Shown piece by piece: positions 481 through 64,000 of a stretch of DNA of 64,000 bases (its first letter is position 1; every line of letters starts with the position of its first letter). Both the position numbers and the translations under genes were made by a program. The DNA is from Styela clava (taxonomy: Eukaryota): positions 9,610,001 to 9,674,000 of the forward strand of contig NC_135256.1 of NCBI RefSeq assembly GCF_964204865.1, read 5' to 3'. The notes under the pieces were generated by a model. The model saw only the letters and a program-made list of their open reading frames with translations, was not told the DNA's origin and did not search any database.

Positions 481-3197
481 TCCTATGCTAATAAATTCCT
501 TTTTGCTTCAATCCTACCAAGTGCTGGTTCGAGTATTAATATAATAGCATATTCCGCTTGTTATCTTGCTTTAAAAGTACAACAGCCCTAAAGTTTAATA
601 CAATCGCGTATTTTTTGTGCCAAAGACTCGTTTTACCTAGTTTTTTTGTGTTTTTTTTGCTTAACATTTTGTGTGTGTGTGTTGGTGAGCGGGCATATGA
701 TACCTCTCATGTTTTATACTTTTCCAATGTTTCTGCTCGCTCTTCATTTTTTTTGTATATATATTATCGAGTATCGATCTATCTAATTAGAGTAATACTG
801 AATGTGACTGGTTTTGTTTGCTCTCCTAATCTATGATCATATTTTATTTATTTACTTCTATCAATCATCTTTCATTAATAGATGTTGTTTTGGTCCATGC
901 ATTTGAGCATTGCAAATATTTATGGGTTGTAGGTAGCCATAAACATCTCAGTGGAAGCTTCTGTCTTTGCATTCTAATAAGTTTTCATCTATACACAACC
1001 TTAACCGTGAGCCACTCTTTATAGTGGTTCACCCTTTCTCGTTTGCGGACTGGTAAAATTTCAAAACAACTAATTTTGCGGACTGGTGAACCTTCAAAAT
1101 CAACTCAAAATGTCAAATACATAGAACATAATCAAACAAATGTAATTACGACAATTAAAATCAGACAATTCAATTTAATGAATATTTGGTTGCTGTCTTT
1201 CTTATATATATCATACTTGTTAAACGCCTTTCTAAAGAAGTTCTACAAAGCGAAGTGCAGCGTTGAATTTTACACGATCTTTGTATTTGGTAATGATGAG
1301 AGATAACATGGAAAGATTTTCTCACATAAATACAGGACTTTGTCACAGGATTTTCCTCTTTAAGAGAGATAGAAAAGTGTTACAACGGCGAAATATCAGT
1401 TTCTCCTTATGTCATGTTAAACCCACTAACTTTTTGCAGGTTCCTTTCGAAATAACTGAACTGACAGTCACAGGGTCCACCGGATGATGCCTTTTAGAGG
1501 CCATGAGCAATTATGATTTTGGTGTCCAATATAAAGAATGAAACTGATTGAAGTCATGTCTGCAAGATATTTTTTTGGAAAACAGTTTGTGAAAGTGTTG
1601 CCCCAGTCAGTCTCGATGACTCTTCTATTACATCAATTCTTACTATTTTTCTCGGGGACTCGCTGATATCTAGTTTCACTCAATGTGATATTTTTATCAA
1701 TGGCGCCGAAATTACTCTTTTATTCCTTGCTATTTCTTGCTCGTCGGCATGCCTTCACTTTCTCGCCCACCTGTCTTGCCTGCTGGCCCTTCCCTACAAC
1801 TCATTTCACCCTGTGGTGGGGTTCGGACCCACTCCCTCTCCCCCTCATACTTGGTCTGATGTTTGTCCGTGTATGATTCCCTTGCGCCACTGCTACTGAT
1901 GGAGATTGGGTGGATCAGATTATTACTTACCAAAGTCACGCTTGGCAGCCCGCGACGAGGCTAATCAACCCGAAAAGTTACGCTAACATACGGATGCGTA
2001 GATAAAGAAGGTATTGATGACTCAATGTCATCTTGAACTATCGCGTGCGCTGCTTTAACTATTGAATGTGTGGATATCTAGTTTTCAATCGTTTTTCATT
2101 TTAGTTCACTTTTTCAAGAAAAGCGTATTTATGAAATCTTCGGCGAATGTTTGAATCATGTGAATATTTGTACAAATACTATCATATTCCGTTTTTTATC
2201 GTGGTTCATGTTAGTTTACCTTTTACAAGAAATATTAATATTATGCAATCATCGGCGACAAGACGCATAAGATAATTTAAAGGCATGAATCTGGAAACCA
2301 AATTTCTAACCGTCAGCGGAGGAATACTAAGACTTGAAAACGGTCATCTTTTTGATCATTTCTATCTCTTGGGTTAACTGACCGTCTTATATCTGGTTTA
2401 CTGTTTCTGAATTCTCACAAACATCTCACAAAAAAATGTTCAAATTCAGGACCAGATCATACCTTTCGTGGCTCCAACCACTTATAATTTGGTTCTTTGT
2501 ATATAAATATTAATAATTATAAAACTTGTGTTTTATGTTATCTGAAATTAAATATTTGAGTTTCCGTGTTCATTACTAATTGAGGGCCAAGTTACGAGTA
2601 ATTGTCATGATTTTTTTTTTATATATTGGAACAGTTTCCATACTCACAAACATTGATACAGAGATTTAAGATGATACTTGACCGATTTTATTTTAACCGA
2701 GCCATTATCGAGGTCTGTGTTGTCTGACCAACTCGAATTATTTCATTAAATACATAGGTACCATTGAAATATGGTCTATGGAAATTTCTTTGGTACCTCT
2801 TTGCCTTGATGCCCTAAGCACGTGCTTATATTGCTCAATGGTTAATCGAGCACTGCCACGAACAGATCGATTCGAACAAAAAAAAATATACCGTTCGTTA
2901 GCAATATTTATTATGCGATTACTAACTATAGCAATAAATAAGAGAAAGCACAAATTTTAAATAAGCAGTTCGAATCGAAATTTGAATATCAATCGTATGC
3001 ATAAACTCATTTTAATTCTCAGGGAACATTTTGAGCATAGGCATGTATTCGTTTTCGCTAAAGTACCAAGACATTATATTCCAAGTCAATTGAAAGTATA
3101 TATAACATTTGATTGTGGAGTGGTTGAATGAAAGAAGCATTTTCAGTGGTAAGGAGTCCACGGGCCGACTGGAATAACATATTCGCAAGCTTGTTCG

Positions 3198-6100
3198 TTA
3201 ATATTTGCAAGCTTGTTCATTACAACTTCTTACTTCTTCAGATTCTCCAAGACAAAATGCACCAGCTGGTCTGCAAACTCTTCTTCTTGTTTGAATTCCT
3301 CCTGGATAGCAAGTGCTGGGGCATGGACTGTATTGACCCCACTGACTCCATGAAGCGCAAGGTTGGTCTTTGCATCTGCTTACTTCAACCAAAGGTTTTG
3401 TACATTTGCTTTTATCCTCACTAATGCATTTCCTGTAGCGACGCTTTTGCCCAACACCACATGTTGCTGAACAGGACGAAAACAGGCTCCATTCGGTATA
3501 ATAATGAGATGGACCAGAATGCATTTTTAAGATGTCAGATTTAGGGAGATAACACAAATTAATCTCGCAACATCCGTCGAATCTTCCCTTGAGTGGAGCA
3601 AATCTTGGGACGTGGAATGGTTTGTACGGACAGTAGCTGTTGGAAGGTAACTGAGGAACAGTTGGAGGACTGCATGGTCTTGCTCCGTATGGCCTGAAAA
3701 TGTGACCGCATGCTTCACTTTTACCTGGAATCATATGCATAGACGACAAAGAAGAGAATGATTCTGATGGTGTAGCAAATGGATTTGAATTTTTTGGAGG
3801 GGTAAATGGGGATGGACCTGTTGGAACAGAAAATGAATTACCAGATGGTAATTCGAATGGATTGTTTTCCTTCGGAGGAGTCGAGGGTTTTGAATTCTCC
3901 TTATCATCTGTGTTTTCATAATTGGTAATTTTGTCATCAATATTGTAAGCACCAATCTCTCCTTTCTCCACTCCGGCCCAGTAATCCCAGTGCTTATCAA
4001 CAGTCATACCTTCACCGACAGCGAAAAGATTTTTATAATAATTAGTTGTGACCGAAGAATCAACAGTGCATCCAGCACTGAGACATTGATGATAACTCAG
4101 AAGTATGCGAACGGGAGAACTTGTATCAAATATCTGGCATCTAGGTCTTCCGTAAATGATCTCATGCTTGTTGAATCCAACATGACGTTGACCTGATTTG
4201 ACCCTGACATTTGAAATGTCAACTGAATAAAAACAACCGTACCCGTATCTAAAACATCCATCAATCAAAGAACATTCTCTGGGATTAATATCTGAAAATA
4301 CAAAAGAGTATATTATATAAATATTCTGAAAATATCGTGTATAAGAATATGAAAAATAGAAACTTGGCTTACCTTTCCATCCGGCCAATTTTGGACTAAC
4401 GTGAAAAACGTCAAGAATTGGAAGAAGTTCACAACCTTTTGGTGTTTTCATCTCCAATTGGAACTCTTGCAGAATGCAGTTTGTGAAGTAAGGATTCCAT
4501 ATTCCGTGCTATGAATAGTAAATAATAATATATCATATACCATGTAAAAAATGACAATAAAATGATTGTAATTGCGACCTATAAAATATAACATATTTGT
4601 ACCTCCTTCACGACTAATTGAGCTTTTTGTTGGAAAACTGCATTTCTTATTGCCATATGACAAACTGGAACTCCTGGTAGAACGCTTGGTCCAAAAGCTT
4701 CTCGGAAATCAAACAATTCTTTGTCAAAATAACAACCAGGTTGTGAACCACAGAGATGGTGATCGGTGTCTAATTCTGCATTGTCGACTGAACATGGGAT
4801 TCTGGTGAATGTAAAAGTAAAATAATATAGTTTATACTTGTACAAGGTAATATGACTGTTCAACTTTCGAAAGCTTTAAATGTGTAAAATATCAGACAAA
4901 TTATAGTTTCCGCATTTTCTTATTATCGTTACGATAGAGTCTTTTACGAAAAGTAAGGGATACAGTTTCAAACAAGGTATGATAACAAAGACCGATAATC
5001 TTGGGTAATAGTATTCTACCGATTTAACTTTTCTCACCTGACACAATAGGGAACATCAACTGGTGGATCAAGAACGTAAGGTTCATTCCTTTGTGGATTA
5101 CAACTTGCTGGAAATGGAGTCGGTTGAGGACATCCAGGAAATCCTGTTGTAAAAAAATAGAATAATGAATTAAAAAAGTAAAAATGTATTTATTTTAAAA
5201 TCTATTATGCAGAATAAAATAATCCGAAGCAGTTTGATAAGATATTTGCTTATTTTCTATTGTGCCAGCCTCATACATAAAGAAAATATTTTTCTAATTC
5301 TTCATTAATTTTTCAAAAATGTGACAAAACATTTTTATTTCTACCTGGTGGTCGTAAGTGAAGAAATCTTGCGCTGTCTTTCTTCATTTTCATAGCTTTT
5401 TTAAACAGATCATCAGTATCGTCGACATTACCAGCCTTTGAAGCTGCTGCCGTAACTGAAAATTAGAATATATACCATAAGACGACTTTATATGATGTAA
5501 ATTTATAGAGTATGCATTATCATTTTCATGCTGGAAGAGCAATGTCTGTTTAATTAATTTCATATTTCTCGTTTTTTTAGTTTTTTTTAAGTTTTACAAG
5601 TTTATATGAGATCAATCGAAAAACTTGGGAAAACCAACCGTCTATATTCACACCTGGATAAGGTTAGTTGATATAAACTAGTTGTGAAAAAAACTAGCTA
5701 TCAACATCTTGAAAGATTTGCATCAGAATGAGCTAGATTGGATCGTTGATGATACTTTGGTTATAAATAAAATTAACTAATGAAAAATTGCCAAGATAAA
5801 CGGAATTTTGATTCTATTATTTGAATCCAGATATCTGTAAAATTATTATGGAATAATTGCATTGATATACTTACGTTTTTCTGTATCAGGTTGAGCGTAA
5901 CAAACTGCTGTTTCTCCTTCACCGATTTTACAACAATCTTTATGTTTGTGACAATCATCAGCATCGACTGTTTCTGAAACACCGTCCTTTACAACAGTGC
6001 ATAATAATCCTCCTTCGCTTCCGAGTCCTGTAAATTATATAAAATCAGTTCAAGTTTTGAAACTACATCAAAATATGGGCGCATATGGAAATAATGTGCG

Positions 6101-6523
6101 ACCAAACAACCAGGGTTAGTAAATGGAATAGCAAAGACGGAACAATCTTCCATGAATATTTTTTTTATCGCCGAGTGACAATTCAACTTAGTAAAAATGG
6201 ACTAACACTAGGAGCGTATGATATTCAGTTGTTTGCTGTTCTAGTCGAATTATCGTAAATGTTTCGCATTACATTGTATAGTCTGTTTTAAACACTTGTT
6301 CATTATCAACACGATGCTCCACCGCAAAGCAATAGAAGGCATTACAATTCCGTTTTTCTTCACATTTGACCACTGCCTACAGAATCGACTTATCAAAGGA
6401 AGATTATGATAAGGAATAAAAGTTTAAAAAAAAATTCATACCCATCAGTGGAGTACATTGCTTCTCAGCGGCAACAGCAATCACCACGCATAGAACTGCA
6501 ACAAAAAATGTTCCAACTTTCAT
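3198..6523 (-). CDS. Secreted Cys-rich protein (~626 aa) with several divergent trefoil (P-type)-like modules, a Pro/Ser-rich linker and two C-terminal thrombospondin type-1 repeats; 7 exons
   Basis: Exons 6442-6523, 5875-6027, 5345-5455, 5038-5143, 4603-4801, 4373-4508, 3198-4291 are all GT-AG and phase-compatible (1881 nt). Signal-peptide-like N-terminus MKVGTFFVAVLCVVIAVAA. Trefoil-like Cys spacing (C-x13-C-x15-C-x5-CC-x9-CY; ..LCGSQPGCYFD..; ..GWKDINPRECSLIDGC..GCFY). TSP1 motifs WSLFSSCSATCGVGQKRRYRKC and WSQWGQYSPCPSTCYPGGIQTRRRVC. The trefoil call is by pattern only. Confidence 0.85.
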
Positions 6524-6630
6524 CTTCTGATATATGTTTCGTCTCAGTTTTATTTGACGATTCCAAATAGATCTAAATTTTAAATTTCAAATTTGTTTCA
6601 ATTTGAATCTGATTCTCTGAAGAATCGACT

Positions 6631-6641
6631 CAGTATTTATA
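6631..6641 (-). promoter_or_regulatory. Putative TATA box of the left secreted-protein gene
   Basis: GTATAAATAC on the - strand ~110 nt upstream of the ATG, inside a promoter block conserved with the right copy. Confidence 0.5.
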
Positions 6642-9600
6642 CCTGAAATGTGCCGCCCAGGGGCAAATTTCGTATGTTCATATCAGTATTTTTCACTTTC
6701 ATTGAGCTTGAATCATCGATGCTGGGCATTTGTTAAAATGTAGGATTAATGTGTCAGAATTTCGATTTCACACAAATAAAATACGCGCTAATTAAATATC
6801 ATCCATATGCTAATTATAATGAATCTTACGAGTTTGTATCAGTGGATATTTTCGTAAACTTTACCTAATTTTCGTTATTAATTATCTTCACACAATTTTT
6901 CGTTATTTTTGTTATATTTAAAGTAGCAATACGAAATACTTTATGTGTGTCTCGTGTTTCGTTATATGGTGAATAATTCAAATTCCGTCGTTACTTCTAA
7001 TTTTCATGTTAAATTTAGCAAAGTTTCAGCACTGATTCATTACATATTCACTTCATACGATTAGTAACTTTTTGGTTGAATTTTCCAGTCTCGCCCTGTA
7101 CTACGTGAGCCAAGATATATTATGTCATTTACATTCGAAATGATCTCACAAAACATGTATAATATATTTCTGTTGATCAAATATCATTTCAGAAATAAGG
7201 TGAAATTGCGACTTCTATTTTAGTGAACTTACTAGTATAGACTTTAGCGTTAGATTTTCCTAACCAGTCCGGCTGTTAACAATGTATTATGTGTTCCGAA
7301 GCTTCTTGCAAAAAAAGGGGATGATTTAATCTTTTACTATTCGAAATCTGTGGGTTTGTGGATCTAAGTTTTTAAAAAATTCTTCAAGTAGTATAATTTA
7401 GATATTTCACATCGGCCATGACAATGACCACTTGATTGAAAATAGGATCTCGGTTTATGAAATACCGTGTACTTATCAGTCTGTCAAATCCTACCTTATT
7501 TTTCCTATCCTAGGCGGTAAACTTTTTATGAGTATATTTCCGCAAATCACTCCAAATGTGAGTCTAGAAAAGCAAGCACTCATTTGAAAAGTACCAAAAA
7601 GTCGGCTATTCCTACACAATTATTGACAAATTGAGATTGTAGGCTTGACGATTTTATCTTAGATCTTTAATCTACGGCACCAAAATGGTCCAACGCTCTA
7701 ACAATCAGGCTATTACGTCATAGACTTGAAATGAATAGGTTCCGAAATTAGGTCCTATCAATAAAAGTATTCGAAATATTACGGGAATTTTACAATAACT
7801 CTATTTAGTGTCTATTTAGTTTTGAATTATTGCGTCTGGGCATGAATGCTCGGTCTTTTACTTCTAAACTGACCGAAATTGTCTCATACCATGTATCGAT
7901 AAAAAAAAATATTCCATAAAAATACCCGGTTTCGATCGAAAGATGACCAGGTTTCAGTCTTCGATCAAAAGATTAGTTAATTTCATTTTGATCAACGGGT
8001 AAGCCGTAAACTGATAAAATGCAGAGTAAACACATATTGGAGACGTCATAGAATTTCTTGTTTCAATGCGTAATAATTGCGCTACCTGCATTAATGTTGG
8101 TGATGTAATAATTGAAATTCACCTGACCACTCGCGAATGTTTTCACATGACGAACTTTCAAGCATGCTTGTTAATATTGACTCGTCACCGCAATTTTAGG
8201 TTTTAAGAAACATATTTTAATTAAGTTTCCAAATTTTCTTTTCAATCAAATAACTTAGTTATCAGTTACCAAGTCTTCGAAAGAATTTTATTTCAGTTGA
8301 GGTGATCAAAAAATAGCCACGAAAGAGAAAAGATACAATAATCAAATTAGCTGTTTGGGTGGAAATACCGCAATTAACCTAATATTCAATATATGATTTC
8401 TTTCTTGATTATCAGTTATGATGTAATACCAAATTGAAAAAGAAAAGGCAATTTCATACAGCTATCTCAAAATCGCGGAATACAAAATGACGTAAATTCT
8501 AATGGGATTACCGATATCATGTTTTGTGACACTAATTCAAAAAAGCGAAAATTGTCTAATATTTCGATACCAGTATTATTTATGGATTTTTAGGAAAATT
8601 TTTATGAACTCGTCGTTGTTGGAATTTGTTATTTTCTGGTGATAATGATGATTTAAACGCACTGAACACCTTTGTATTTTAATTGAAAATTCACATACAC
8701 TTTCGCTAGTACTCCAACCCATTTTAAAAAATGTTCTACTTTTGATTCCCTTGTCTTCATAGTAATTCAAATATTGATTTAAAAGTAGCTGATATTGACA
8801 ATTTTAATATGAAACGTAAATTAATTGCTTCTACATCCTATTCCATGTCTTTTTTTAATTAATCAATTTTTTTTTTATTCATTTACACATTTATTGTCGT
8901 AACAGGGCTTTGACGGGAAAAACACAATACAGATTAGAATCAACTAAATTTGAAAAGATAGAATATTTCCATGTGAGCATGTCTCGACATAATACTGATG
9001 TCCTATTGAAATGCATTGCATAGTACATGTGCATGCTGTGCTTAAAATGGAGAATCTTTTTCATGCAATGATTTTAGCCCGTAAACATTGTGTCACATTG
9101 CTCTGAAAGAAATTCCCCTATGCTTTAGTCTTATTCTCAATAATTTACATAAATAGCAAAGATTCATTTTCTGGAATCTTGAATGTCCCAAAATATCCCA
9201 ATCAATTATATCTGTTATCACTAGATAGATTAAAACACTGCTTTACAAAAAATATGAAACTTATGAATAAGATTGTAAAATTTTTTTGTTTCATATGCCC
9301 ATGTTAGAGCCAGTATATTTGGAAAGCAAAGCCGGGCCAGAACCTATCTATACTGTTCTGTATTTCTATTGTATCCTACTATTTGTTTCCGAAACAAATA
9401 TGATCATCATTTAATTCTAAAAATAGACATCTAGACAAACCTAATGAGTTGTTGTCTCTCAATAAGTCACAATGACGTAATTTTAAGCGCGTCATTTTGC
9501 GTAGAAACGTAGGTTTGCCCAAGGCCAATTTTAAGGACACTTACTCATACAAATTATGTCATTGATTACCGTTCACTCAATTATAAAATATTTCATACGA

Positions 9601-10739
9601 ATTAGATTCTTAAATTAGATGGAAACACATGCAGAATATCCCATTACGCCAAGGATGAGAAGGCATTATTTTCTGTCATTAAAAAGAAGAAAGTGGGTTT
9701 TGGATTCAATTAATGTCTGGGTCAATATAAAACTTGTGGTTGCATGTTGGAAACGGAGTGTATTGACCGTTTTGTTGTTGTTGGCGATGGTATTCTTGTT
9801 TTATTATTGTTGTTGTGAAATAATCGCTTTTCTCTTTAAATCATCGAACCAATTGCTTTAAAACTTTCAGGTACTTCTATTTATATCCTGAATTTTTGTG
9901 GGCTCCATGAAATTTATTTTCGTGCGATGATGTCATAAAAACTTTTGCGCACCTTGCGACAGTTTCGCGTTTGCGTTGGTTGCTTTCGGGGTGATCGGAA
10001 GAAGTGGTGAAAACTGCAGTGTCGGGAGTCTAATGAGAAAGATTGCATACTCATACAACTTCGTTTAGAGCTTAGAAGAGCCGACTTTTTCAGCGTATAC
10101 CGACTTTTCTGTCACGTAAAATATTCAATTCTTTCCAGCTACGAGAATCTAAAATTTCCTTCTATATTAATATGATTGTGTCCAACGTAACTCGCAGTTG
10201 CGTCTTCTTTGGACAAAATAAAAACATTAATTACTTTTTTAAAATACCACGTCAATCTGTTGACATAAAACATGAGATAAATGTTGACATGAAACTGTAG
10301 TTTTGATACTTATTTTTGCGCTCTTGCGAATTCGTTATCACCGTTACAAAAATCTCAAGATATGTAATAAAATACCGCAGAGTACAAATGTAAATAAAAT
10401 GAATATGTATTCATGGCCTCGAAATCCCCGCAAAACGACGGATAATAATGATTGTTCTATAGTGCAAAGTCATCAATTCATGACCGATACGGGTATATTT
10501 AAAATACCTTGCTTTATTAATTTAATTGTCTTCAATTTTAACCTGTGGTTGCGTCGACAAATAGAGGAATCAATACTCTAAATTTCTAAAAAACCACGGC
10601 AATCCGCCGACTTAAAAATTGGTGGTAAACTGCCGAATATCTAGATTTGGTGAGTATTTTCGCCATTTTGCGAATTCGATAGTTCTGAGCGTACTTGCAA
10701 CACTGAGCTCCGCTCTATCGCAAAGCTGCAACTCAAAAT

Positions 10740-10868
10740 ATTGGGCACGTAGTGGTCATATGGATCGTTTTGGTATTTTTGTTGTTGTTATTTTACATAG
10801 TTATGAAAAAGTCGCCTTTCTCTTTGATTACTAGACCAATTGCATTGAAATTTTCAGTGGTTAAAGAT
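10740..10868 (+). mobile_element. Older, truncated copy of the HINE-like family
   Basis: TTGGGCACGTAGTGGTCATATGGATCGTTT..GACCAATTGCATTGAAATTTTCAGTGGTTAAAGAT matches 58570-58730. Other remnants at ~9760-9870, ~20715-20743 and ~35978-36007. Confidence 0.6.
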
Positions 10869-10869
10869 G

Positions 10870-12290
10870 GAAGTACTATCACGCTCACTCAATTCAAGTG
10901 AAGACAACTCACTTCATGAGATTAAAAGAATATTACACGCCGTAACAAGGTGTACGAAGAACAATCGAGAAACTTAGTAGTTCAATAATATTCGGGTGAC
11001 GGTACGGTTGAAATCAGTATATGAAAAACTGCTCCGTAGCAGGAAGTCTTAAAGGAAAATCTTCGTTAAAACGAAACATATCGAGTTGTTATAATATACT
11101 TTTTTTCAGTTTTGCCCTGTGCCTCAAGACTGAGGTAATAACAAATAACTTGAACCATAAGTGGAAAGAATTCGAATATCTGTTGGCACTTTATGTGGCA
11201 AAAATCTCGACTGAAAAATCCAAATAGAAGGGATCGTTATACAAGGCAAGCATTGTAAAGCAAGGGATATCAAAGTGTTTATATGTGCAAGTATGGTCTA
11301 CTATACAGATTACGTGAGTTTTGCTCCAAAAGGCAATTATTTAAGTTGATAAGTTAAAACGTCTCATAGCTAAAGGACGGTTGTTTTATTTTTTGATATT
11401 TTTCAATCTCAGATTTACTATTTTTCTGCCTGCGATTAGTCAAAATGCTTTTTTATTTCACACTGACTAAACACTTGGAAAAAATAATTATGGGTTCTCA
11501 TTTTATAATGATTTAACGGAACAAACTGTTCTGCCATCGCCGCGATAGTTACACTAAAGTTTTATGAGTAAACTAAAGAAATTGTTAAATCATCGTTTGT
11601 AAAATTATTTGAATGAATTATGTAATATGTATTTACGCCCCGACCTTTTTTCATGTTTTAGCCACAGTCTTATCGGAGTATTCAGAACGCGTTTGGAAGA
11701 ACTCAGAGTCGATCATAGTACATACGGGGTGATATATTTTTAAATAGTTTATTCTTTCGATTTTCAATAAAAAGCAAAAATAATGAAAATATATTTATTC
11801 AAATTTAGCTTTGAATAAATACAAATGAAGTTATTCTACGAAATTGTCAAAGTCTCGATTGAAAACTCAGTCTAGAACAGTGGTTCTCAACCATTTTTTC
11901 TCGCGCGCTCCACCTTCGCTGCACAAACATGCCGTGAGGCAAAAACTTTCTTATGCGAGCGAAAACCTGTAAAAAAAATTAAAAAATTTTTTTTCAAAAT
12001 AGACAGCTCCACTTTATAATTAAAATGAGAATGGCCACTCAGTGACAAAAATAACATCATCATTCATTACTACCATACAATCAAATTGACCTAATAAATG
12101 TATTATCTCGAAACTTTTTTAATAGGTTTATAACCCTCCTGAAAATGCTTTCGGTTTTAAATATAGCCGTTCAAGATCAGTAAATATGTGGATAATATTT
12201 TTTTTCAACAGCTCTTTTCTGAGAAAGGAAAGAAAGGAATTTCTGATACTCTTAAATTGGAATGCAAAACATTCGACAAACTAAGCAATG
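10870..12290 (+). pseudogene. Copine pseudogene fragment E (part of intron 7 plus exons 8-10)
   Basis: Remnants at ~11110-11244, 11662-11728 and 12212-12285. Exon 8 has a 1-nt deletion (GAATTCGAA-TATCT), AGA>TGA, a 3' deletion and a GT>GC donor. Flanking introns match copies B and C. Confidence 0.85.
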
Positions 12291-12625
12291 CAAATGAATA
12301 AATTTTGGAAAGTTCGAGCAATGGCAATTGGTGCTTGATCTTACATGAAAATATATCAAGATATTTGAGTATCGCTCTCTTGTGTATGGATCGAATAACT
12401 CAAATGGTACCAATGGTAAAGTATAGGAAGGATTTTTCGCGGGTCAAGGGTCGGGAAACATCCATTACCCTAGAATTATGCAACAACAGATTGTACAAGT
12501 AAAATTTTACAAGATTGTACATGCAAATGAAAGAAAATCGGTTATCAATTAAATAAACGTGACAGAAAAGTTGCCACTTTTTCCTGATTAATCATGTTAT
12601 GCATTCATAAATCAGCACTTCCCTT

Positions 12626-12775
12626 CTAAAACACATGAGTTTCTACGTGTTTGCCTATTGAGCTAGACCTCGATTCTTCAGAGGTTTGACCTGCAATCGA
12701 TAAATCTTTTTCATCGGGAGTTGATGTTGCTAGAACTGACAGACATTTGAGGACAAACTGTGACCAAATAGGAGA
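12626..12775 (-). mobile_element. hAT (Ac/ZBED1-like) transposase C-terminal relic
   Basis: Translation SQFVLKCLSVLATSTPDEKDLSIAGQTSEESRSSSIGKHVETHVF follows the hAT dimerisation consensus (L..PATS..SER.FS.AG......RS.L....VE.L.F). Confidence 0.65.
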
Positions 12776-12799
12776 ACTCATGTACCTCTGATTTCTCTG

Positions 12800-13790
12800 A
12801 TTAGGTTCGTAGTTTCGAATCCTTTGGGGATAATTATGTGTGAGTACATTGCCGGGTTCCTTGCCCGTTTCACCTCCGGGAGTCCACAACACGAGGCACG
12901 CGTGCCAAATTTGTCACGCCATACGCTCAAACGTGGCACGCGAATGGTTTTTTAAAAAAAAAAAATTTATGACTTACATTAAAATATTATGCTTCTATCA
13001 AAATCAGCAGTTTTTCAGGACATTAAATTGTTTCAATAAATTGAATGAATAGATATTCGTTATTAGGTATTATTATTGAAATTTGTTTGATGTGTGTTCT
13101 ACGGGAGTTTATTTACAAAGGTTGTTTCCCTGAGCATCGACTTCCTTGTTTACTTCGTGACAGATTTTAAGGCGTGGTCGTTTTCATTACATCGTTTTCG
13201 CGTTTTTGAATTCTATTCTTTAGTTTTCAGTTGTGTTACGGATATGAAAATATATATAAAATATTTCAATGATCACTTTGTCTTCTTAGAAGTTTCAGTT
13301 CAATTGCAGTAATCGAAAATTAGTGTAGATATATATACCGGTAGCTGTGATAGGCTAAAATTCAGATTGTTGAATGCTATGAATCCGAATGATGGCTTGG
13401 AACAAATATCCCATTTTACAAGCGCCTCGCGTAACCACTCTTAAAATAAGCACCGAAAATTTTGCAATGGTATATTATAGGAATAATTTTACGGGGGTCA
13501 GAGGTCGGGGAGAAGTCTATACCAACGATTGTGCGTGGCACGCGACAAGATTATTTTGAAAAATTTGGCCCGTGTCCTCATTCGAGTGCACCCCTGATGT
13601 CCTAACCGCTGGTCGGTTGCAGCTTCCACCACCATCAAGTATATGCATCTAAAACAAATAACTATCTAACTAATACCATACCCTTCTTGGATTGGTGACC
13701 GGGAGAAAAGCCGGGTACGCCATATAATTAAGCCGTCCAATCGGGTTTCGCGTCAGGGATGAATATATAAAAAATATCCTAAGTCGATCA
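12800..13790 (+). mobile_element. SINE copy upstream of copine A, interrupted by a hAT-type MITE (~12876-13596)
   Basis: 12800-12875 and 13597-13790 are reverse-complement homologs of 29700-29950. The insert has GGCACGCG motifs near both ends and ends in ...GTGCACCCCTG. Confidence 0.65.
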
Positions 13791-58826: not shown

Positions 58827-60143
58827 GCTAGAATACCTTTGCGAAAATTATCATTTCGTCATGAAAGCATTGTAGTCAAAAGCTTTTTATTATTCATATT
58901 GACATGTAAGAATTTCTAAATAGCCGCCCAGAATTGACGCATAGTGGTGGGCTTGAAATCCAGTTCACAGCCAAGGCGCACATTGACCCACGTTTACGTT
59001 TGGATTATTGCTGCCAAAAAAAGAAGAAACATATATTTTTAGATTGATTCAACAGCTTTCTGCGGAACTATTATGGAAAAAATATGAGCTACGACGTATG
59101 TTTGTGAGCGCGCGATGCTGTAGCATGGTCAAAAACGTGTTTTTCTACTTTCACATTGTGAAGTCACGGATTCGGAGGATTCGATTCGAGTCCTTGACCT
59201 ACTACTCGGATTCGTCGAATCCATGTAATGCCGGACTCGTCCCATCCCTAGTAGATATAGGATCCTAACTTGAAACATATTATCAAATCCAGTTTATCTA
59301 CAAGCACTGTGCTTGAATGTATTTCTTGTCACATAAGGTTTCTGCCAAAACCGCGGTGAATGAAATCATATAGGGCAACCTACGGCCTCATTTACCAAAT
59401 GTGACCCCAAGGAAACTTGTGCGACCCGCGGAAAAACGTCACTTTTGAGTAGTGTGCGGCCCGCAAAACCAGTTTCAAATTTAATCTAGTATGTGCGAGT
59501 AATTCCATTTCTTTTATTCCGAACAATCAATCATCTTTCACGCATCAGGGCAAAGAACGATTAAAGAATTGTAATTCACAAAAAAAATACTCTATTTGCT
59601 TAATTCCTATTTAATTGTTTGGGAAATCCACATTCAAAAGTGATATGATATTGGATTATTTTTTATCAATGACTACAGGTATTCCGGCGCTCAGCGTAGC
59701 GTTATCGCGTGCTTTGTTGCTAAACTTGATTTGTTTTAGTTCAGTCTAACATTTGTTTTGTATTGATGAAATTCTGTCTGTGTGTACTGAGCACTTAATA
59801 GTAAAATACCACTTAACACTTCCCGCAGTATAGGTTAATATATAACTTTTATAGAAAGTGTCAGTTTCAGCGCACTATAATAGTAATTCAATTACTTCAT
59901 GTATGTTTTTTTGTGAGAATATTGTAACACATTATACATTAATTGGAATTTGTCTTCTTATGGTGTATATTATAGCAAGATGTCACTCATTCTACTTCAG
60001 CCAAACTAGGCATCTTCACATTCGATTTCAATGATACCTCTTCCACTCACCACCAAAAGTGCGTTAGAAAGAATATTACATTGACTTTTTTATTTGATTT
60101 GACGTTGATGTTTCAGTCTGACTTCATTCGATTCATCTTGAAA

Positions 60144-60384
60144 ACAAGAGAGCTATGCTCAAATATATGGACACGTAGAGTCACATAATTTTAATAACGT
60201 CATAGCGAAAAAAAAAAGTAATAGCCTTCTGGAGAAAATTTTTATCTTTAACCACTGAAAATTTCAAAGCAATTGGTCCAGTATTCGAAGAGAAAAGCGA
60301 CTTTTTAAAAACGTGTCAAAGAACAAGAACAACAACAACAACATAATATTGAAACGATCGTTATGTCCACTACGTGTCCAAAAA
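60144..60384 (-). mobile_element. Second, near-identical HINE-like element in opposite orientation
   Basis: Reverse complement of 58570-58826, differing mainly in microsatellite length and a few substitutions. Confidence 0.65.
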
Positions 60385-62289
60385 TGTTAGCATCTCCGCG
60401 TAGATTTCAGACGACGTCATATTGTACTGTAAGTGGACTGAAAATTGTCCCCCGGCGAATTTCGTTTTCGTACGAAAATGAGCTCGCGATTACGTAATCG
60501 AGACACATATACGCAAACAAGTTGATTTTATCATGATGACTATTTTTAGAATTGGATGACGACAAAACTTTGTTACGGTAACTAAGACAACAGCAAGCCT
60601 TTTGGATCAGATGAAGTTAGAACGTGATTCAAAATAAAGTGTTTGTGATTGTCTGATTGAGGCTCACAAACAGACATTTTTTCACAACACCACTATTAAA
60701 TCCCTTTTGTAATTTTGTAGTTTTTTACTTCGGTACAAATAATTAATGCGTGTTAAATTACTAACATAACTGGGTATGTTTGAATTCATATTCGATTGTG
60801 CGCATTTCAGATTGGCTTCCACCTCAGTTTCGTCATATTATTAATATATCCCCCTGAATAAAATAGACATAACTTTGAATTATTGCGATAAAAATTCACG
60901 TTTCACTTCAAACGTAGAATAGCGAAATATTTATTTGGCATTGTGTAATATGTCATATATATGGGGAGAAGTTAAGTATTTGTGTTGTCGATGCTGATTC
61001 AAACAACTTCTGGTTCTTACAATTATAGTAGTCTCTACTCTATGTCTGAACCCAAAGAATCGAAAATATTTTCAAAGTATCGAATGGCAATATTTTAGAG
61101 GTTTTCCTAAATATTATAAAATTAAAAAATAAGGTATAAACCTTTGAAGCAAATTCACTTTAAAACTTTTGTGAAAATTTTGATATTACTGAGGTTTAAG
61201 TGGAAATCTAGTAAAATGCTCTTCATACGGTAGATTTTAAATCTTTTAAAGTCGATAGAGGTGAAATAAATGATCCTCTAACTACGACTGAAACCTGGTC
61301 ATCGGTAACCGAAACAAGCTATTTAAATAGAATTTTTGCTAATTATTACTTGATATGAGAGAATTGTGATCACTTGCTTTTTCTACGCACACGTACACCT
61401 TCAATCAAGCGTGTTACCTTGAAGTTTTGAATAAGATTATCGTAAAAACAGCCCAAGATCTGTTGTCTCATTTTTTATATAGATATATTTCCATGTAAGA
61501 TCAAGCATTAAAATTAATACTCATTGTCATTGTTCTATCTTTCCTAAATTTGATGATGTGCATTTATCCGTCCCTGTGATTAACATGAAAAAGTAGAAAC
61601 ATGTGATATAAATAATAAGAAAAAACAATGTACAGTAGAAATCTGCACTGTTAAATTTACGAAAATGAGAATTAGATTTTCGTATTACTTTTCATTCTAT
61701 ACTCATATTATCGTTATCGGAACTGAAAAAATTACATCAGAATATGTTATGAGGTCATTTCGATTGAAAACAACATAATATCTCTGGTTTCGTGTACCAA
61801 GTAGGAACTGAAATTTCGAACAGATAACTAACTTAATGTCTTAAATAAAAATTTAATGAATCAGCCAGACATGGAATGATAAAATAAAGTTAATTTAAGC
61901 TGAAAAGTTTAAATTAGAAATATTTTAGAGTAATTCAACAATGATACGACACTATTTGTATCACCTTTAAATAAACAAGCATAGGATAAGTAGACAAAAA
62001 TGTTTATTCATGACTCCATAGAGTGAGACTTAAAAAGATGAAGTAAAACAAAAATTTGGTAATTTTACAGATAATTTCAACATTGCAAACTAATTAGTTG
62101 CAACAACGTGATGATCAACATAAAGATAGCTAGCTTACACGTATATATATATACATTGTGTGTATAAAAATAGAAAATCTGATTCATTAATCTCATTTTT
62201 CATCAAATTTCCAACATCGGTGATTCAAGCTTAATGAAAGTGAAAAATACCGATAACATACGAAATCGCCCCTAGGCGACGTATGTCAA

Positions 62290-62299
62290 GTATAAATAC
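62290..62299 (+). promoter_or_regulatory. Putative TATA box of the right secreted-protein gene
   Basis: GTATAAATAC at the equivalent position. 62200-62330 is the reverse-complement homolog of ~6600-6730. Confidence 0.5.
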
Positions 62300-62405
62300 C
62301 GAACTCATTTTTCATAGAACCAGATTCAAATTGAAACACATTTGAAATATAGATCCAGTGGAAATCGTAAAATAAAACTGAGACAAAACTTATACATATG
62401 AGAAG

Positions 62406-63982
62406 ATGAATGTTGGAAAACTTTTTGTTGCAGTTCTCTGCTTGGTGGTTGCTGTGGCCGCTGAGAAGCAATGTTCTCCACTAATGGGTATGAATTTATT
62501 TCTGTTTATTTTCTTCGCATATGATGTGCCGCTTTTATCATGAAACGCTGTCACTGACAAAGGTTCTAGATTAAGAGGCTTTTCCATGTTTCTTCTATTC
62601 TTAACTTTATTACGACACGAGTCATATGCGTTGCGCTAACCATAACAAATAATGAAGTTTTGAGTGAGATTTTGCGCCATTGAAAAATATGTCAATACTT
62701 TAACCCGCTGGCATTTGACACTCTTTTCTCCCATATTTGCAGGCACAAGAGATGGCTGTTCAAAATACACATTTCGTTATTCTTGAATTTTTCAAATTCT
62801 CAGCAGTTTTTTGTTATAATATTTTTCCAATAGTTAGACGAAAAATTCCACTCATTTGTATTGAACATGCAAATATGTTTGTTTTATAAAATCTCTTTAA
62901 CATAGGATTCGGAAGCGAAGGAGGATTATTATGCACTGTTGTAAAGAACGGTGTTTCAGAAACAGTCGATGCTGATGATTGTCACAAACATAAAGATTGC
63001 TGTAAAATCGGTGAAGGAGAAACTGCAGTTTGTTATGCCCAGCTTAATCAAGAGAGACGTAAGTATATTATTTTTTTGAAATCAAAACTAAAGATAACAG
63101 AATTGAATTAAATTGGTGAAAAATAATTCATTAGAGAATTACAAAGTTACCGAGAAAGTGCAGATGCTGTTCAAAATCCTCGCCAAAACCTAAAGTCTAT
63201 AGAAAATGATGATGAAAGTCAGGAGTTGAAAAAACGTTGATGTTTGGTTCCGAACTATATCTTGCAAAATAAGGATAAATTTCACTCATTACAAATTTTG
63301 ACGTAATATATGAAGAATTTGGATTCATTTAATTTAGCAAAAGATTATAATAACGGATTGTTTCTAAACCGAATTCTAGCCTATATGCTTGCATGCTGGA
63401 TGCACGATGTTACACTACAAGTACATGTCTAAGAGTTTACAAGACACGGGAAGTCGTCAACATTATTCTAATTTTCAGTTTCAGCAGCTACTGCGAATGC
63501 TCGAACAGTCGACGATAGTGACGATCTGTACAAAAAAGCCTTAAAAATGAAAAGAGACAGCGCAAGATTTCTCCATTTACGTCCACCAGGTATTTTATTA
63601 TGTTCACATTTCTTTTTAGGGACGTGAAAAAGATTTTGTTTATGACCAAGTAGTCTTTTAGACTCAATCAAAACAAAAACGAAGCATGCATTGTGGGAAT
63701 TTCTATTTGCTTTTATGCATGAAATCTGAAAAGAACAAAAACAACAGAAATCTTTCACTCTTCATCTGAGAACTATTTTTCCGCTACAGAATGCCGTTAC
63801 TTAGATAAACGGGTGGTTTACATTTTTTTTTTCTGTTTTACCAAATATATACCTATTTTTTTTTTTATAACAACAGCATTTCCTGGATGTCCTCAACCAA
63901 TTCCATTTCCAGCAAGTTGTAATCCACAAATGAATGAACCCTACGTCCTCGATCCACCAGTTGATATTCCTTATTGTGTCAG
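62406..63982 (+). CDS. Paralog of the secreted trefoil-like/TSP1 gene, first four exons (continues beyond window)
   Basis: Exons 62406-62487, 62906-63058, 63479-63589, 63877-63982 have the same lengths (82/153/111/106 nt) and phases as the left copy. Protein begins MNVGKLFVAVLCLVVAVAAEKQCSPLMGFGSEGGLLCTVV. Confidence 0.88.
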
Positions 63983-64000
63983 GTGAGAAACTTTGAATCA

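What the first reader, a model, noticed from the sequence alone, without database searches (positions are those of the whole stretch)
3198..64000. ~60-kb inverted segmental duplication: a copine array bracketed by two outward-facing secreted trefoil-like/TSP1 genes
Seen: left arm = secreted gene(-), spacer, copine E(+, pseudogene), SINE, copine A(+). Right arm read backwards = secreted gene(+), spacer, copine C(-), SINE, B(-), SINE, D(-, truncated). Inverted homology extends into non-coding DNA: ~6600-6730 vs 62200-62330; GATGACCAGGTTTCAGTC at ~7942 vs its reverse complement at ~61286; 14.1-14.7 kb vs 59.3-60.0 kb; 25.6-26.3 kb vs 30.0-30.9 kb. Inference: a head-to-head cassette of one secreted gene plus tandem copines was duplicated as a unit, with the inversion centre at ~26.3-27.2 kb. 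I know of no described copine + trefoil/TSP1 cassette. A shared role, such as regulated secretion or membrane repair in a mucus- or tunic-secreting epithelium, is speculation.
Basis: partly seen in the sequence, partly recalled or inferred. Interest (0 to 1): 0.75.

Follow-up and report, generated by a model that had tools for sequence, protein, structure and literature searches.

The report
Mirrored copine gene cluster, sea squirt
A sea-squirt chromosome carries three copine genes and two copine fragments in mirror-image order between two outward-facing secreted-protein genes, which looks like ordinary repeated local gene duplication and not a new functional unit.

Summary
Inverted matches to the right arm cover 65% of the left arm (3201-26319); same-strand matches cover only 99 bp.

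Layout: S1(-), copine fragment E(+), copine A(+) | centre 26320-27182 | fragment D(-), copine B(-), copine C(-), S2(+).

The genome is the ascidian Styela clava.

The inference of one cassette copied as a unit is only partly supported, because divergence is uneven:
- Copine bodies differ by 13-15% in every pair.
- S1/S2 introns 1-2 and the S-copine spacer, which lie between the similar parts, differ by 28-41%.
- D-B differ by 6%, and a 1.66-kb B-C tract by 3-5%.

The history therefore has several steps and includes gene conversion. S1 lacks a third TSR-like module that S2 and two other paralogues keep.

The secreted genes belong to an uncharacterised family found so far only in ascidians. Seven copies lie within about 205 kb here, and others lie on six further contigs away from any copine. 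Functional coupling is unsupported. "Trefoil-like" fails every sequence test. Interest is low.

The parts
3198..6586 (-). S1: secreted cysteine-rich gene. ATG at 6523-6521, signal peptide, last exon 3198-4291 with two TSP_1 repeats. It lacks the third TSR-like module that S2 has.
   Evidence: Pfam TSP_1 E 1.2e-18. Exons mapped with homologues P0002/P0003/P0007. Splice sites read. Signal peptide seen. Truncation shown.
6524..6768 (.). Conserved block upstream of the S1 ATG (5'UTR and proximal promoter), mirrored at about 62168-62405.
   Evidence: Exon 1 plus upstream (6441-6768) differs at p 0.158. Flanking intron and spacer differ at 0.32-0.41. HSP 6428-6768 / 62501-62168.
6769..9560 (.). Left S-copine spacer with three colinear inverted homology blocks: 6769-7244, 7867-7996 and 9382-9560, matching 62235-60413.
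   Evidence: p 0.319, 0.280 and 0.282; E from 3e-12 up to part of a 7e-174 HSP. The 18-mer is confirmed. 60386-60700 has no other copy in the genome.
10741..10868 (.). Partial copy of the 243-bp high-copy short interspersed element. Other copies lie at 58569-58826 and 60142-60385, with a degenerate one at 9747-9870.
   Evidence: At least 2159 candidate genomic copies, 96-98% identical to the copy at 60142-60385.
10871..12282 (+). E: 1.4-kb copine fragment covering the C2B-exon region only. It is a pseudogene piece.
   Evidence: HSPs to A 20834-21702, B 35888-34724 and C 50493-49365. p 0.138-0.162 to A, B and C. A single degenerate exon hit at 11108-11185.
12283..13607 (.). Interspersed-repeat filler between E and A.
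   Evidence: 2794 candidate genomic matches.
13608..26319 (+). Copine A. First coding exon near 16.0 kb; last exon ends with a stop at about 25559-25561.
   Evidence: Pfam C2 on one exon. PF07002 matches at window 22899-23021 and 24069-24233. Exon hits. Last exon intact. Homology limits.
26320..27182 (.). Centre of the mirror. Mostly unique DNA, with small dispersed-repeat pieces at 26726-26881 and 27104-27185.
   Evidence: Bridged by X1 contigs except for 26602-26651.
27183..29926 (-). D: copy of the 5' part of copine B only. It carries a 671-bp transposon insertion at 27985-28655 that is absent from one allele.
   Evidence: D-B p 0.058 (1490 aligned), D-A 0.127, D-C 0.134. An X1 contig joins 27984 to 28656, and word depth reaches about 15,000 inside the insert.
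30035..42053 (-). Copine B.
   Evidence: Pfam Copine E 5.3e-18 on exon 32158-32445. Exon hits. Homology limits.
30896..32539 (-). B side of a B-C gene-conversion tract; its partner is 43911-46830.
   Evidence: p 0.029 over 1444 aligned and 0.047 over 213, against about 0.15 elsewhere between B and C.
42054..43180 (.). Transposon-filled gap between tandem units B and C. It includes a roughly 208-bp element that matches on both strands.
   Evidence: 4745 candidate genomic matches.
43181..60030 (-). Copine C, with extra insertions such as 54744-56844.
60386..62167 (.). Right S-copine spacer, the mirror of 6769-9560.
62168..64000 (+). S2, 5' part: ATG at 62406, signal peptide, exons at 62890-63108 and 63882-63983. 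The gene continues outside the window to 66906 and keeps a third TSR-like module.

Best explanation
This is a lineage-specific gene cluster in Styela clava, built by several rounds of local duplication. It is not one 60-kb event.

Proposed order of events (inferred):
1. An old inverted duplication produced the divergently oriented S1 and S2 with about 3 kb of upstream DNA, probably together with the neighbouring head-to-head copine. The right arm was the parent, because S1 ends exactly where homology to S2 stops and lacks the third TSR-like module that S2 and other paralogues keep.
2. At roughly 14% divergence, the copine copies A, B, C and fragment E, the tandem S0/S1 pair and the 3' half of S1/S2 were created or made alike. 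The mechanism would be tandem or inverted copying and gene conversion.
3. A partial copy of B (fragment D, 6%) and a B-C conversion tract (3-5%) followed, together with many transposon insertions.

The S-copine neighbourhood is most likely an accident of position that segmental duplication propagated. It is probably not a co-selected functional module.

Shown: the arrangement, the divergence classes, the truncation of S1 and the conversion tract.
Inferred: the order of events and the lack of functional coupling.
For: - Mirror arrangement and colinearity.
- Divergence classes:
  - A-B 0.143 (10,125 aligned), A-C 0.153 (8,894), B-C 0.127 (8,498), with a tract at 0.029.
  - E to A, B and C: 0.138-0.162.
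  - D-B 0.058; S0-S1 0.141, contiguous through the introns; S1-S2 3' half 0.117.
  - S1-S2 introns 0.329 and 0.407; spacer 0.28-0.32; exons 0.08-0.13.
- S1-S2 nucleotide homology stops at 3201 / 66717, which is the S1 stop codon.
- S2's extra 64 residues (66712-66906) have relatives in the S copies at 126 and 140 kb but none near S1 or S0. They align to P0002 residues 574-634.
- S0 shares S1's 3' flank: 2668-3010 matches -7176..-6842.
- The cluster is wider than the window: S genes at -63, -48, -6.5, +3, +65, +126 and +140 kb, and a canonical copine at 92-120 kb.
- There is no S-copine linkage elsewhere in the genome.
- The junctions are present in contigs of other runs.
Against: - The three intact copines are almost equidistant, so the order of duplications cannot be resolved. 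The four-copy tree is a star, with site patterns 13/10/10.
- Faster decay of the spacer and of S introns 1-2, instead of an older age, is not formally excluded.
- The head-to-head S-copine pairing is kept on both arms, and an upstream S block is conserved (p 0.158). This leaves room for shared regulation.
- No expression comparison and no cross-species synteny could be done.
- X1 may be the sample the assembly came from, so its support for the junctions may not be independent.
Confidence: 0.6

Rival explanations
1. A two-copine cassette (S2, C, B) was copied once in inverted orientation, giving A as the mirror of B, E as the mirror of C, and S1. The left arm then suffered deletions that reduced E to 1.4 kb.
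For: - The order and orientation fit exactly.
- E lies between the spacer homology and A, and is as far from C (0.162) as A is from B (0.143).
- A is slightly closer to B than to C in the 5' third: 0.12-0.15 against 0.17-0.18.
- The spacer homology is colinear.
Against: - The S introns and the spacer lie physically between the S 3' half and the copines, yet are two to three times more diverged (0.28-0.41 against 0.12-0.15).
- The four-copy tree does not pair E with C or A with B: site patterns are 13/10/10.
- The model requires loss of more than 10 kb of E.
Confidence: 0.2
2. S and copine form a functional, co-regulated module, for example a secretion or membrane-repair pair driven from a shared divergent regulatory region. 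Selection has kept the pair together on both arms.
For: - The head-to-head orientation is kept on both arms.
- There is a conserved block upstream of the S ATG.
- Contigs of run X6, which is only guessed to be RNA, cover the 3' end of copine A.
Against: - S paralogues on six other contigs lack copine neighbours, and four other copine loci lack S neighbours.
- The fourth local copine and the S gene at 126 kb lie tail-to-tail.
- The intergenic distances are 2.4 kb and at least 7 kb, and the sequence is mostly unconserved.
- The literature searches found no such pairing.
Confidence: 0.1
3. The mirror arrangement is an assembly artefact: a false inverted join or a haplotig.
For: Inverted duplications can be created by long-read assemblers. 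X1 may be the sample that was assembled.
Against: - The arms differ by 13-40%, far beyond allelic divergence.
- The window has no N.
- X1 contigs with 0 differences bridge 26319 and 27183, and an X5 contig from a differently labelled organism bridges 27183.
- Each arm has its own transposon insertions.
Confidence: 0.03

Closest known systems
Inverted segmental duplications or palindromes with arm-to-arm gene conversion, such as the sex-chromosome palindromes of primates (named from memory)
   Same: Two arms lie in inverted orientation around a short unique centre. They carry a multi-copy gene family and show evidence of gene conversion between copies.
   Different: The arms here are unequal (23 kb against 37 kb) and 13-40% diverged, not near-identical. 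Conversion is patchy. Tandem copies and fragments are mixed in.
Birth-and-death evolution of tandem gene clusters
   Same: The locus has repeated local duplication, partial copies (E, D, S0), transposon-filled gaps between units, and paralogues in both orientations over about 205 kb.
   Different: Two unrelated families, S and copine, are interleaved.
Copine family (two C2 domains plus a vWA-like Copine domain, PF07002)
   Same: Exons of A, B and C match the Copine domain, and an exon of A matches C2.
   Different: A, B and C are far from the canonical copine-3-like genes of the same genome: 27-64% identity exon by exon to the intronless copy at C8:12.51 Mb. I did not test that.
TSR-containing secreted proteins (properdin, thrombospondin-1, 'coadhesin-like')
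   Same: The C-terminal TSP_1 repeats match by Pfam, by Foldseek and by profile.
   Different: The roughly 250-residue cysteine-rich, largely helical core (P0002 residues 140-390, pLDDT 84-95) has no Pfam match and no PDB fold match. Named relatives come only from ascidians and are all 'uncharacterized'.
Bidirectional (head-to-head) gene pairs
   Same: S and copine are transcribed divergently on both arms.
   Different: The gap from the S ATG to the edge of copine homology is about 2.4 kb on the right arm and 7 kb on the left. The classical limit of about 1 kb is recalled from memory. No shared promoter has been shown.

Membership tests
Inverted segmental duplication (single event) | Two arms in opposite orientation with colinear homology that includes non-coding DNA | tested here: met
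   65% of the left arm lies in inverted HSPs, against 99 bp in direct ones. Colinear spacer blocks.
Inverted segmental duplication (single event) | Roughly uniform neutral divergence along the arms | tested here: not met
   Copine bodies 0.13-0.15 and S 3' half 0.117, against S introns and spacer 0.28-0.41.
Copine (PF07002 plus C2) | Copine/vWA-like domain and C2 domains | tested here: met
   PF07002 E 5.3e-18 on a B exon and C2 E 1.8e-08 on an A exon. PF07002 matches in A, B and C in the genome scan. Tested exon by exon only.
TSP1 repeat (PF00090) | Match above Pfam's gathering score | tested here: met
   67.4 bits against a cut-off of 21.6, two stretches, in the last exon of S1.
Trefoil / P-type domain (PF00088) | Sequence match to the Pfam model | tested here: not met
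   No hit at E up to 10 for the S1 exons, P0002 or P0003. One relative, P0137, reaches E 0.01 and 16.2 bits, below the 21-bit cut-off. The family profile against PDB sequences finds only TSR proteins among 54 matches.
Trefoil / P-type domain (PF00088) | Trefoil fold | tested here: inconclusive
   Model residues 142-204 align to acid alpha-glucosidase 8cb6_F residues 81-134: Z 3.3, rmsd 2.3, 46 aligned, 24% identity, rank 49. That this stretch is the enzyme's P-type domain is my recollection. The Z score is in the noise range given by the tool.
SINE | Short, high-copy, interspersed element | tested here: met
   About 243 bp, at least 2159 candidate copies, 96-98% identical.
SINE | Head derived from a tRNA, 7SL or 5S RNA | tested here: inconclusive
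   ARAGORN finds no tRNA-like gene in the window. Rfam was not run.
Bidirectional-promoter gene pair | Divergent orientation with a short shared intergenic region | tested here: not met
   The orientation is divergent. The gap from the S ATG to the edge of copine homology is about 2.4 kb (right) and 7 kb (left).

The most novel reading that the evidence does not exclude
The head-to-head S-copine pair is a true co-regulated unit of one ascidian cell type, for example a tunic- or mucus-secreting epithelium or blood cells. In this reading a divergent, possibly metal-independent copine handles regulated release of a tunicate-specific TSR protein with a new cysteine-rich fold, and duplication of the pair as a unit raised the dosage of both.
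Probability: 0.08. Interest if true: 0.55.

Novelty: new member of a known kind. Interest (0 to 1): 0.2.

Why it matters
The locus is a clear, well-resolved example of how segmental duplication, inversion, partial copies, transposon insertion and gene conversion together build a mixed gene cluster in a tunicate. It does not call for any new mechanism.

Two by-products may be more useful than the arrangement itself:
- The S genes belong to an uncharacterised secreted family, found so far only in ascidians, with a confidently predicted core that matches no known fold.
- A, B and C are a divergent, Styela-expanded copine subgroup next to a canonical copine.

If later work showed co-expression and conserved linkage, the pair would link copines to a specific cargo, which is not known for any copine as far as I recall.

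Tried and rejected
1. Multiple-alignment distances. MAFFT three-way and four-way alignments suggested that E was twice as diverged as the others (0.27-0.28) and that C was far from A and B in the 5' third (0.22-0.24). Pairwise local alignments showed that this came from misalignment around indels. E is 0.138-0.162 from the others, and A-C in the 5' third is 0.17-0.18. I withdraw the idea that E is an older relic. The four-way alignment that included D was also unreliable, so I used BLAST HSPs instead.

2. A global MAFFT alignment of the S1 and S2 5' halves gave p 0.4-0.55. This is inflated, so I used the local alignment.

3. Synteny through accession numbers. I looked for a Clavelina copine whose accession falls among the clustered Clavelina S genes. 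The search returned only copine-3 orthologues. The Clavelina one lies on a different contig (20.45 Mb, against 28.79 Mb for the S genes). No orthologue of A, B or C was found, so nothing can be concluded.

4. Fold of the S core. Foldseek and VIA-align on the 635-residue model found only TSR matches. The core was not folded alone, so I do not claim a new fold.

5. Literature. 'copine'+'ascidian' gave 0 papers. 'copine'/'thrombospondin type 1'/'tunicate' gave 42 papers with at least two of the terms; none of the 15 listed was relevant. 'Styela clava'+'copine' gave 1 irrelevant paper, and 'copine'+'Ciona' gave 1 irrelevant paper. I saw only the listings and abstract starts. No paper text or supplement was read.

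6. Earlier notes of the scan on this window concern metal sites in the copines. I did not test them. One search found nothing.

Exons were searched one at a time and the joined step was left out.

Full report
WHAT THE WINDOW IS
The window is G000:C8:9610001-9674000 of a 377-Mb assembly. It has 34% G+C and no N. The protein P0007, which its source names 'uncharacterized protein LOC120329040 [Styela clava]', sits on a contig of 24,301,187 bases, the same length as C8. Five of its seven exon matches are 100% identical at -48.6 to -44.8 kb from the window start. The genome is therefore that of the ascidian Styela clava.

CHECK OF THE OBSERVATION
Self-BLASTN gave 52 inverted and 29 direct unique HSP pairs at E<1e-10. 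The parts are:
- S1 (-) at 3198-6586.
- Copine fragment E (+) at 10871-12282.
- Copine A (+) at 13608-26319.
- A centre at 26320-27182.
- Fragment D (-) at 27183-29926.
- Copine B (-) at 30035-42053.
- Copine C (-) at 43181-60030.
- S2 (+) from 62168 to 66906, which runs past the window end.

Of the 23,119-bp left arm, 15,059 bp lie in inverted HSPs to the right arm and only 99 bp in same-strand HSPs. By segment the inverted coverage is S1 67%, spacer 23% and copine A 88%.

With a permissive scoring scheme, 5021-7244 aligns to 63999-61639 as one HSP (E about 1e-174). Two further colinear blocks follow, at 7867-7996 / 61375-61251 and 9382-9560 / 60585-60413. These blocks are not repeats: in a genome search only 60142-60385 was repetitive.

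Pfam on single exons confirms Copine, C2 and two TSP_1 repeats.

IS THE ASSEMBLY SOUND?
- The arms differ by 13% or more, which is too much for haplotypes.
- Contigs of run X1 (25482-26601 and 26652-27307, no differences) bridge both edges of the centre.
- A contig of X5, labelled as another organism, bridges the D edge (27070-27324, 5 differences).
- The 51 bases at 26602-26651 are not covered by a listed contig.
- X1 may be the source sample.

HOW ALIKE ARE THE COPIES?
My first numbers came from MAFFT multiple alignments. They overstated divergence around indels, and I replaced them with pairwise local alignments. Gap-free mismatch fractions are:

| Pair | p | Aligned bases |
|---|---|---|
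| A-B | 0.143 | 10,125 |
| A-C | 0.153 | 8,894 |
| B-C (whole) | 0.127 | 8,498 |
| B-C tract 31093-32539 / 45387-46830 | 0.029 | 1,444 |
| B-C tract, adjoining part | 0.047 | 213 |
| E-A / E-B / E-C | 0.138 / 0.143 / 0.162 | 465 / 958 / 932 |
| D-B / D-A / D-C | 0.058 / 0.127 / 0.134 | 1,490 / 1,300 / 744 |
| S0-S1 (contiguous through the introns) | 0.141 | 2,948 |
| S1-S2, 3' half | 0.117 | 1,687 |
| S1-S2 exons 3 and 2 | 0.078 and 0.134 | 102 and 186 |
| S1-S2 exon 1 plus upstream | 0.158 | 317 |
| S1-S2 introns 2 and 1 | 0.329 and 0.407 | 680 and 376 |
| S-copine spacer blocks | 0.28-0.32 | 464, 125, 170 |

The four-copy tree of E, A, B and C is unresolved, with informative site patterns 13/10/10.

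There are at least four divergence classes. The most diverged DNA lies physically between two much more similar parts. A single duplication with uniform decay does not fit. Two readings remain:
- An old unit duplication, after which the copines and the S 3' half were later made alike by gene conversion. Conversion is clearly active here.
- An old inverted S pair whose intervening copine was later amplified in both orientations.

I cannot separate these two readings.

DIRECTION OF THE DUPLICATION
- Nucleotide homology between S1 and S2 stops at 3201 / 66717, which is the S1 stop codon.
- S2 continues for 64 more residues, a third TSR-like module.
- That module aligns to P0002 residues 574-634 and has relatives in the S genes at 140 kb (E 3.7e-5) and 126 kb (E about 0.1). 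It has no trace near S1 or S0.
- S0 shares S1's 3' flank.

S1 is therefore the truncated, derived copy, and S0 arose from an S1-type gene.

THE WIDER NEIGHBOURHOOD
- S genes lie at about -63, -48, -6.5 (S0, degraded), +3, +65, +126 and +140 kb.
- A further TSR-rich gene lies at 76.9-78.4 kb.
- A fourth copine (+), closer than A-C to the copine-3-like query, spans 92.0-120.3 kb. It has no nucleotide similarity to A-C.
- No copine lies at -70 to -40 kb or at 144 to 164 kb.
- Elsewhere, S-like loci with the family's core occur on C1, C3, C14, C16, C17 and C19. Copines occur at C8:12.51 Mb (two intronless genes), C17:5.12 Mb, C18:12.44 Mb and C19:14.42 Mb. None of these S loci is near any of these copines.

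The pairing is therefore confined to this cluster, as expected if a chance neighbour pair was copied locally.

WHAT THE S GENES ARE
- The last exon of S1 finds 6 proteins. The named ones are a S. clava 'uncharacterized protein' and an oyster 'coadhesin-like' protein that matches only the TSR part.
- An exhaustive search with P0002 gave 1804 proteins at E<=0.001, mostly through the TSRs. A subset matches the core at about residues 100-390.
- Of 10 such clusters looked up, 7 carry names. All are 'uncharacterized' or 'unnamed', from Styela, Ciona, Clavelina (four, with neighbouring accession numbers) and Phallusia. The other 3 are unnamed.
- Pfam sees only TSR families.
- An AlphaFold model of P0002 has mean pLDDT 73.8, with the core blocks at 84-95. 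It matches only TSR structures in Foldseek (22 hits at E<=0.001) and in VIA-align (7 hits at Z>=5).
- The one hint of a trefoil is a Z 3.3 alignment of residues 142-204 to acid alpha-glucosidase residues 81-134. The family profile against PDB sequences finds only TSR proteins.
- 'Trefoil-like' is therefore not established.

REPEATS
- The 243-bp element at 60142-60385 has at least 2159 candidate copies at 96-98% identity. Copies also lie at 58569-58826 and 10741-10868.
- The gaps between copine copies are mosaics of interspersed repeats.
- ARAGORN finds no tRNA-like sequence.

EXPRESSION
The only hint is run X6, which the tool only guesses to be RNA. Its contigs cover 25503-26067, which runs from the end of copine A's last exon (stop near 25560) into the 3' flank, and 27340-27673 inside D. 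Nothing covers B's last exon. This does not test co-expression.

LITERATURE
Four full-text searches found no description of a copine-TSR or copine-trefoil pairing in tunicates. I saw only listings and abstract starts, and no supplements.

VERDICT
The single-cassette inference is only partly supported, and the functional idea is unsupported. This is an ordinary, if tidy, product of repeated local duplication in a lineage-specific gene cluster.

Noticed in passing
window 27985-28655: A 671-bp transposon inside fragment D is polymorphic. An X1 contig and two X7 reads join 27984 directly to 28656 with 4 shared bases. The element reaches a word depth of about 15,000, so it is a very abundant and probably recently active family. 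A related copy lies at 82.2-83.1 kb (L006).
   Followed up: partly
window 57675-58032: A perfect 180-bp tandem duplication (57675-57854 and 57853-58032, 100% identity) lies in the 5' region of copine C.
   Followed up: no
window 29240-29593: This stretch matches its own reverse complement in several registers (68-76% identity). It is a degenerate palindromic or low-complexity block inside fragment D with high read depth.
   Followed up: no
L013 (G000:C8:12506001-12516000) 2940-4670 and 7550-9169, minus strand: Two tandem intronless copine genes (576 and 539 aa) are the genome's closest relatives of copine-3 of Ciona, Clavelina and vertebrates (60-67% identity). The canonical copine-3 orthologue of S. 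clava therefore seems to be intronless and duplicated.
   Followed up: partly
L008-L010, window coordinates 92.0-120.3 kb, plus strand: A fourth copine, closer than A-C to the copine-3-like query, lies 28 kb right of the window. It has an intron of about 18 kb and no nucleotide similarity to A-C. It is probably the ancestral copine of this locus.
   Followed up: partly
L006, window coordinates 76.9-78.4 kb, plus strand: Another gene with several TSP1 repeats lies between S2 and the fourth copine. It lacks the S-family core.
   Followed up: no
window 27340-27673: A contig of run X6 (only guessed to be RNA; depth about 3, 0 differences) covers the part of fragment D that corresponds to the copine's first coding exon and upstream region. 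The truncated copy may still be transcribed.
   Followed up: no
window 42054-43180: The gap between copines B and C holds a roughly 208-bp element that matches on both strands (a MITE-like inverted repeat), nested in another repeat. An open frame nearby (42449-42685, minus strand) looks like a transposase remnant. The transposase reading is my impression and was not tested.
   Followed up: no
P0002 model residues 140-390 (S-family core): The core is confidently predicted (pLDDT 84-95), largely helical and cysteine-rich, with no Pfam family and no PDB fold match in whole-protein searches. It was not folded alone.
   Followed up: partly
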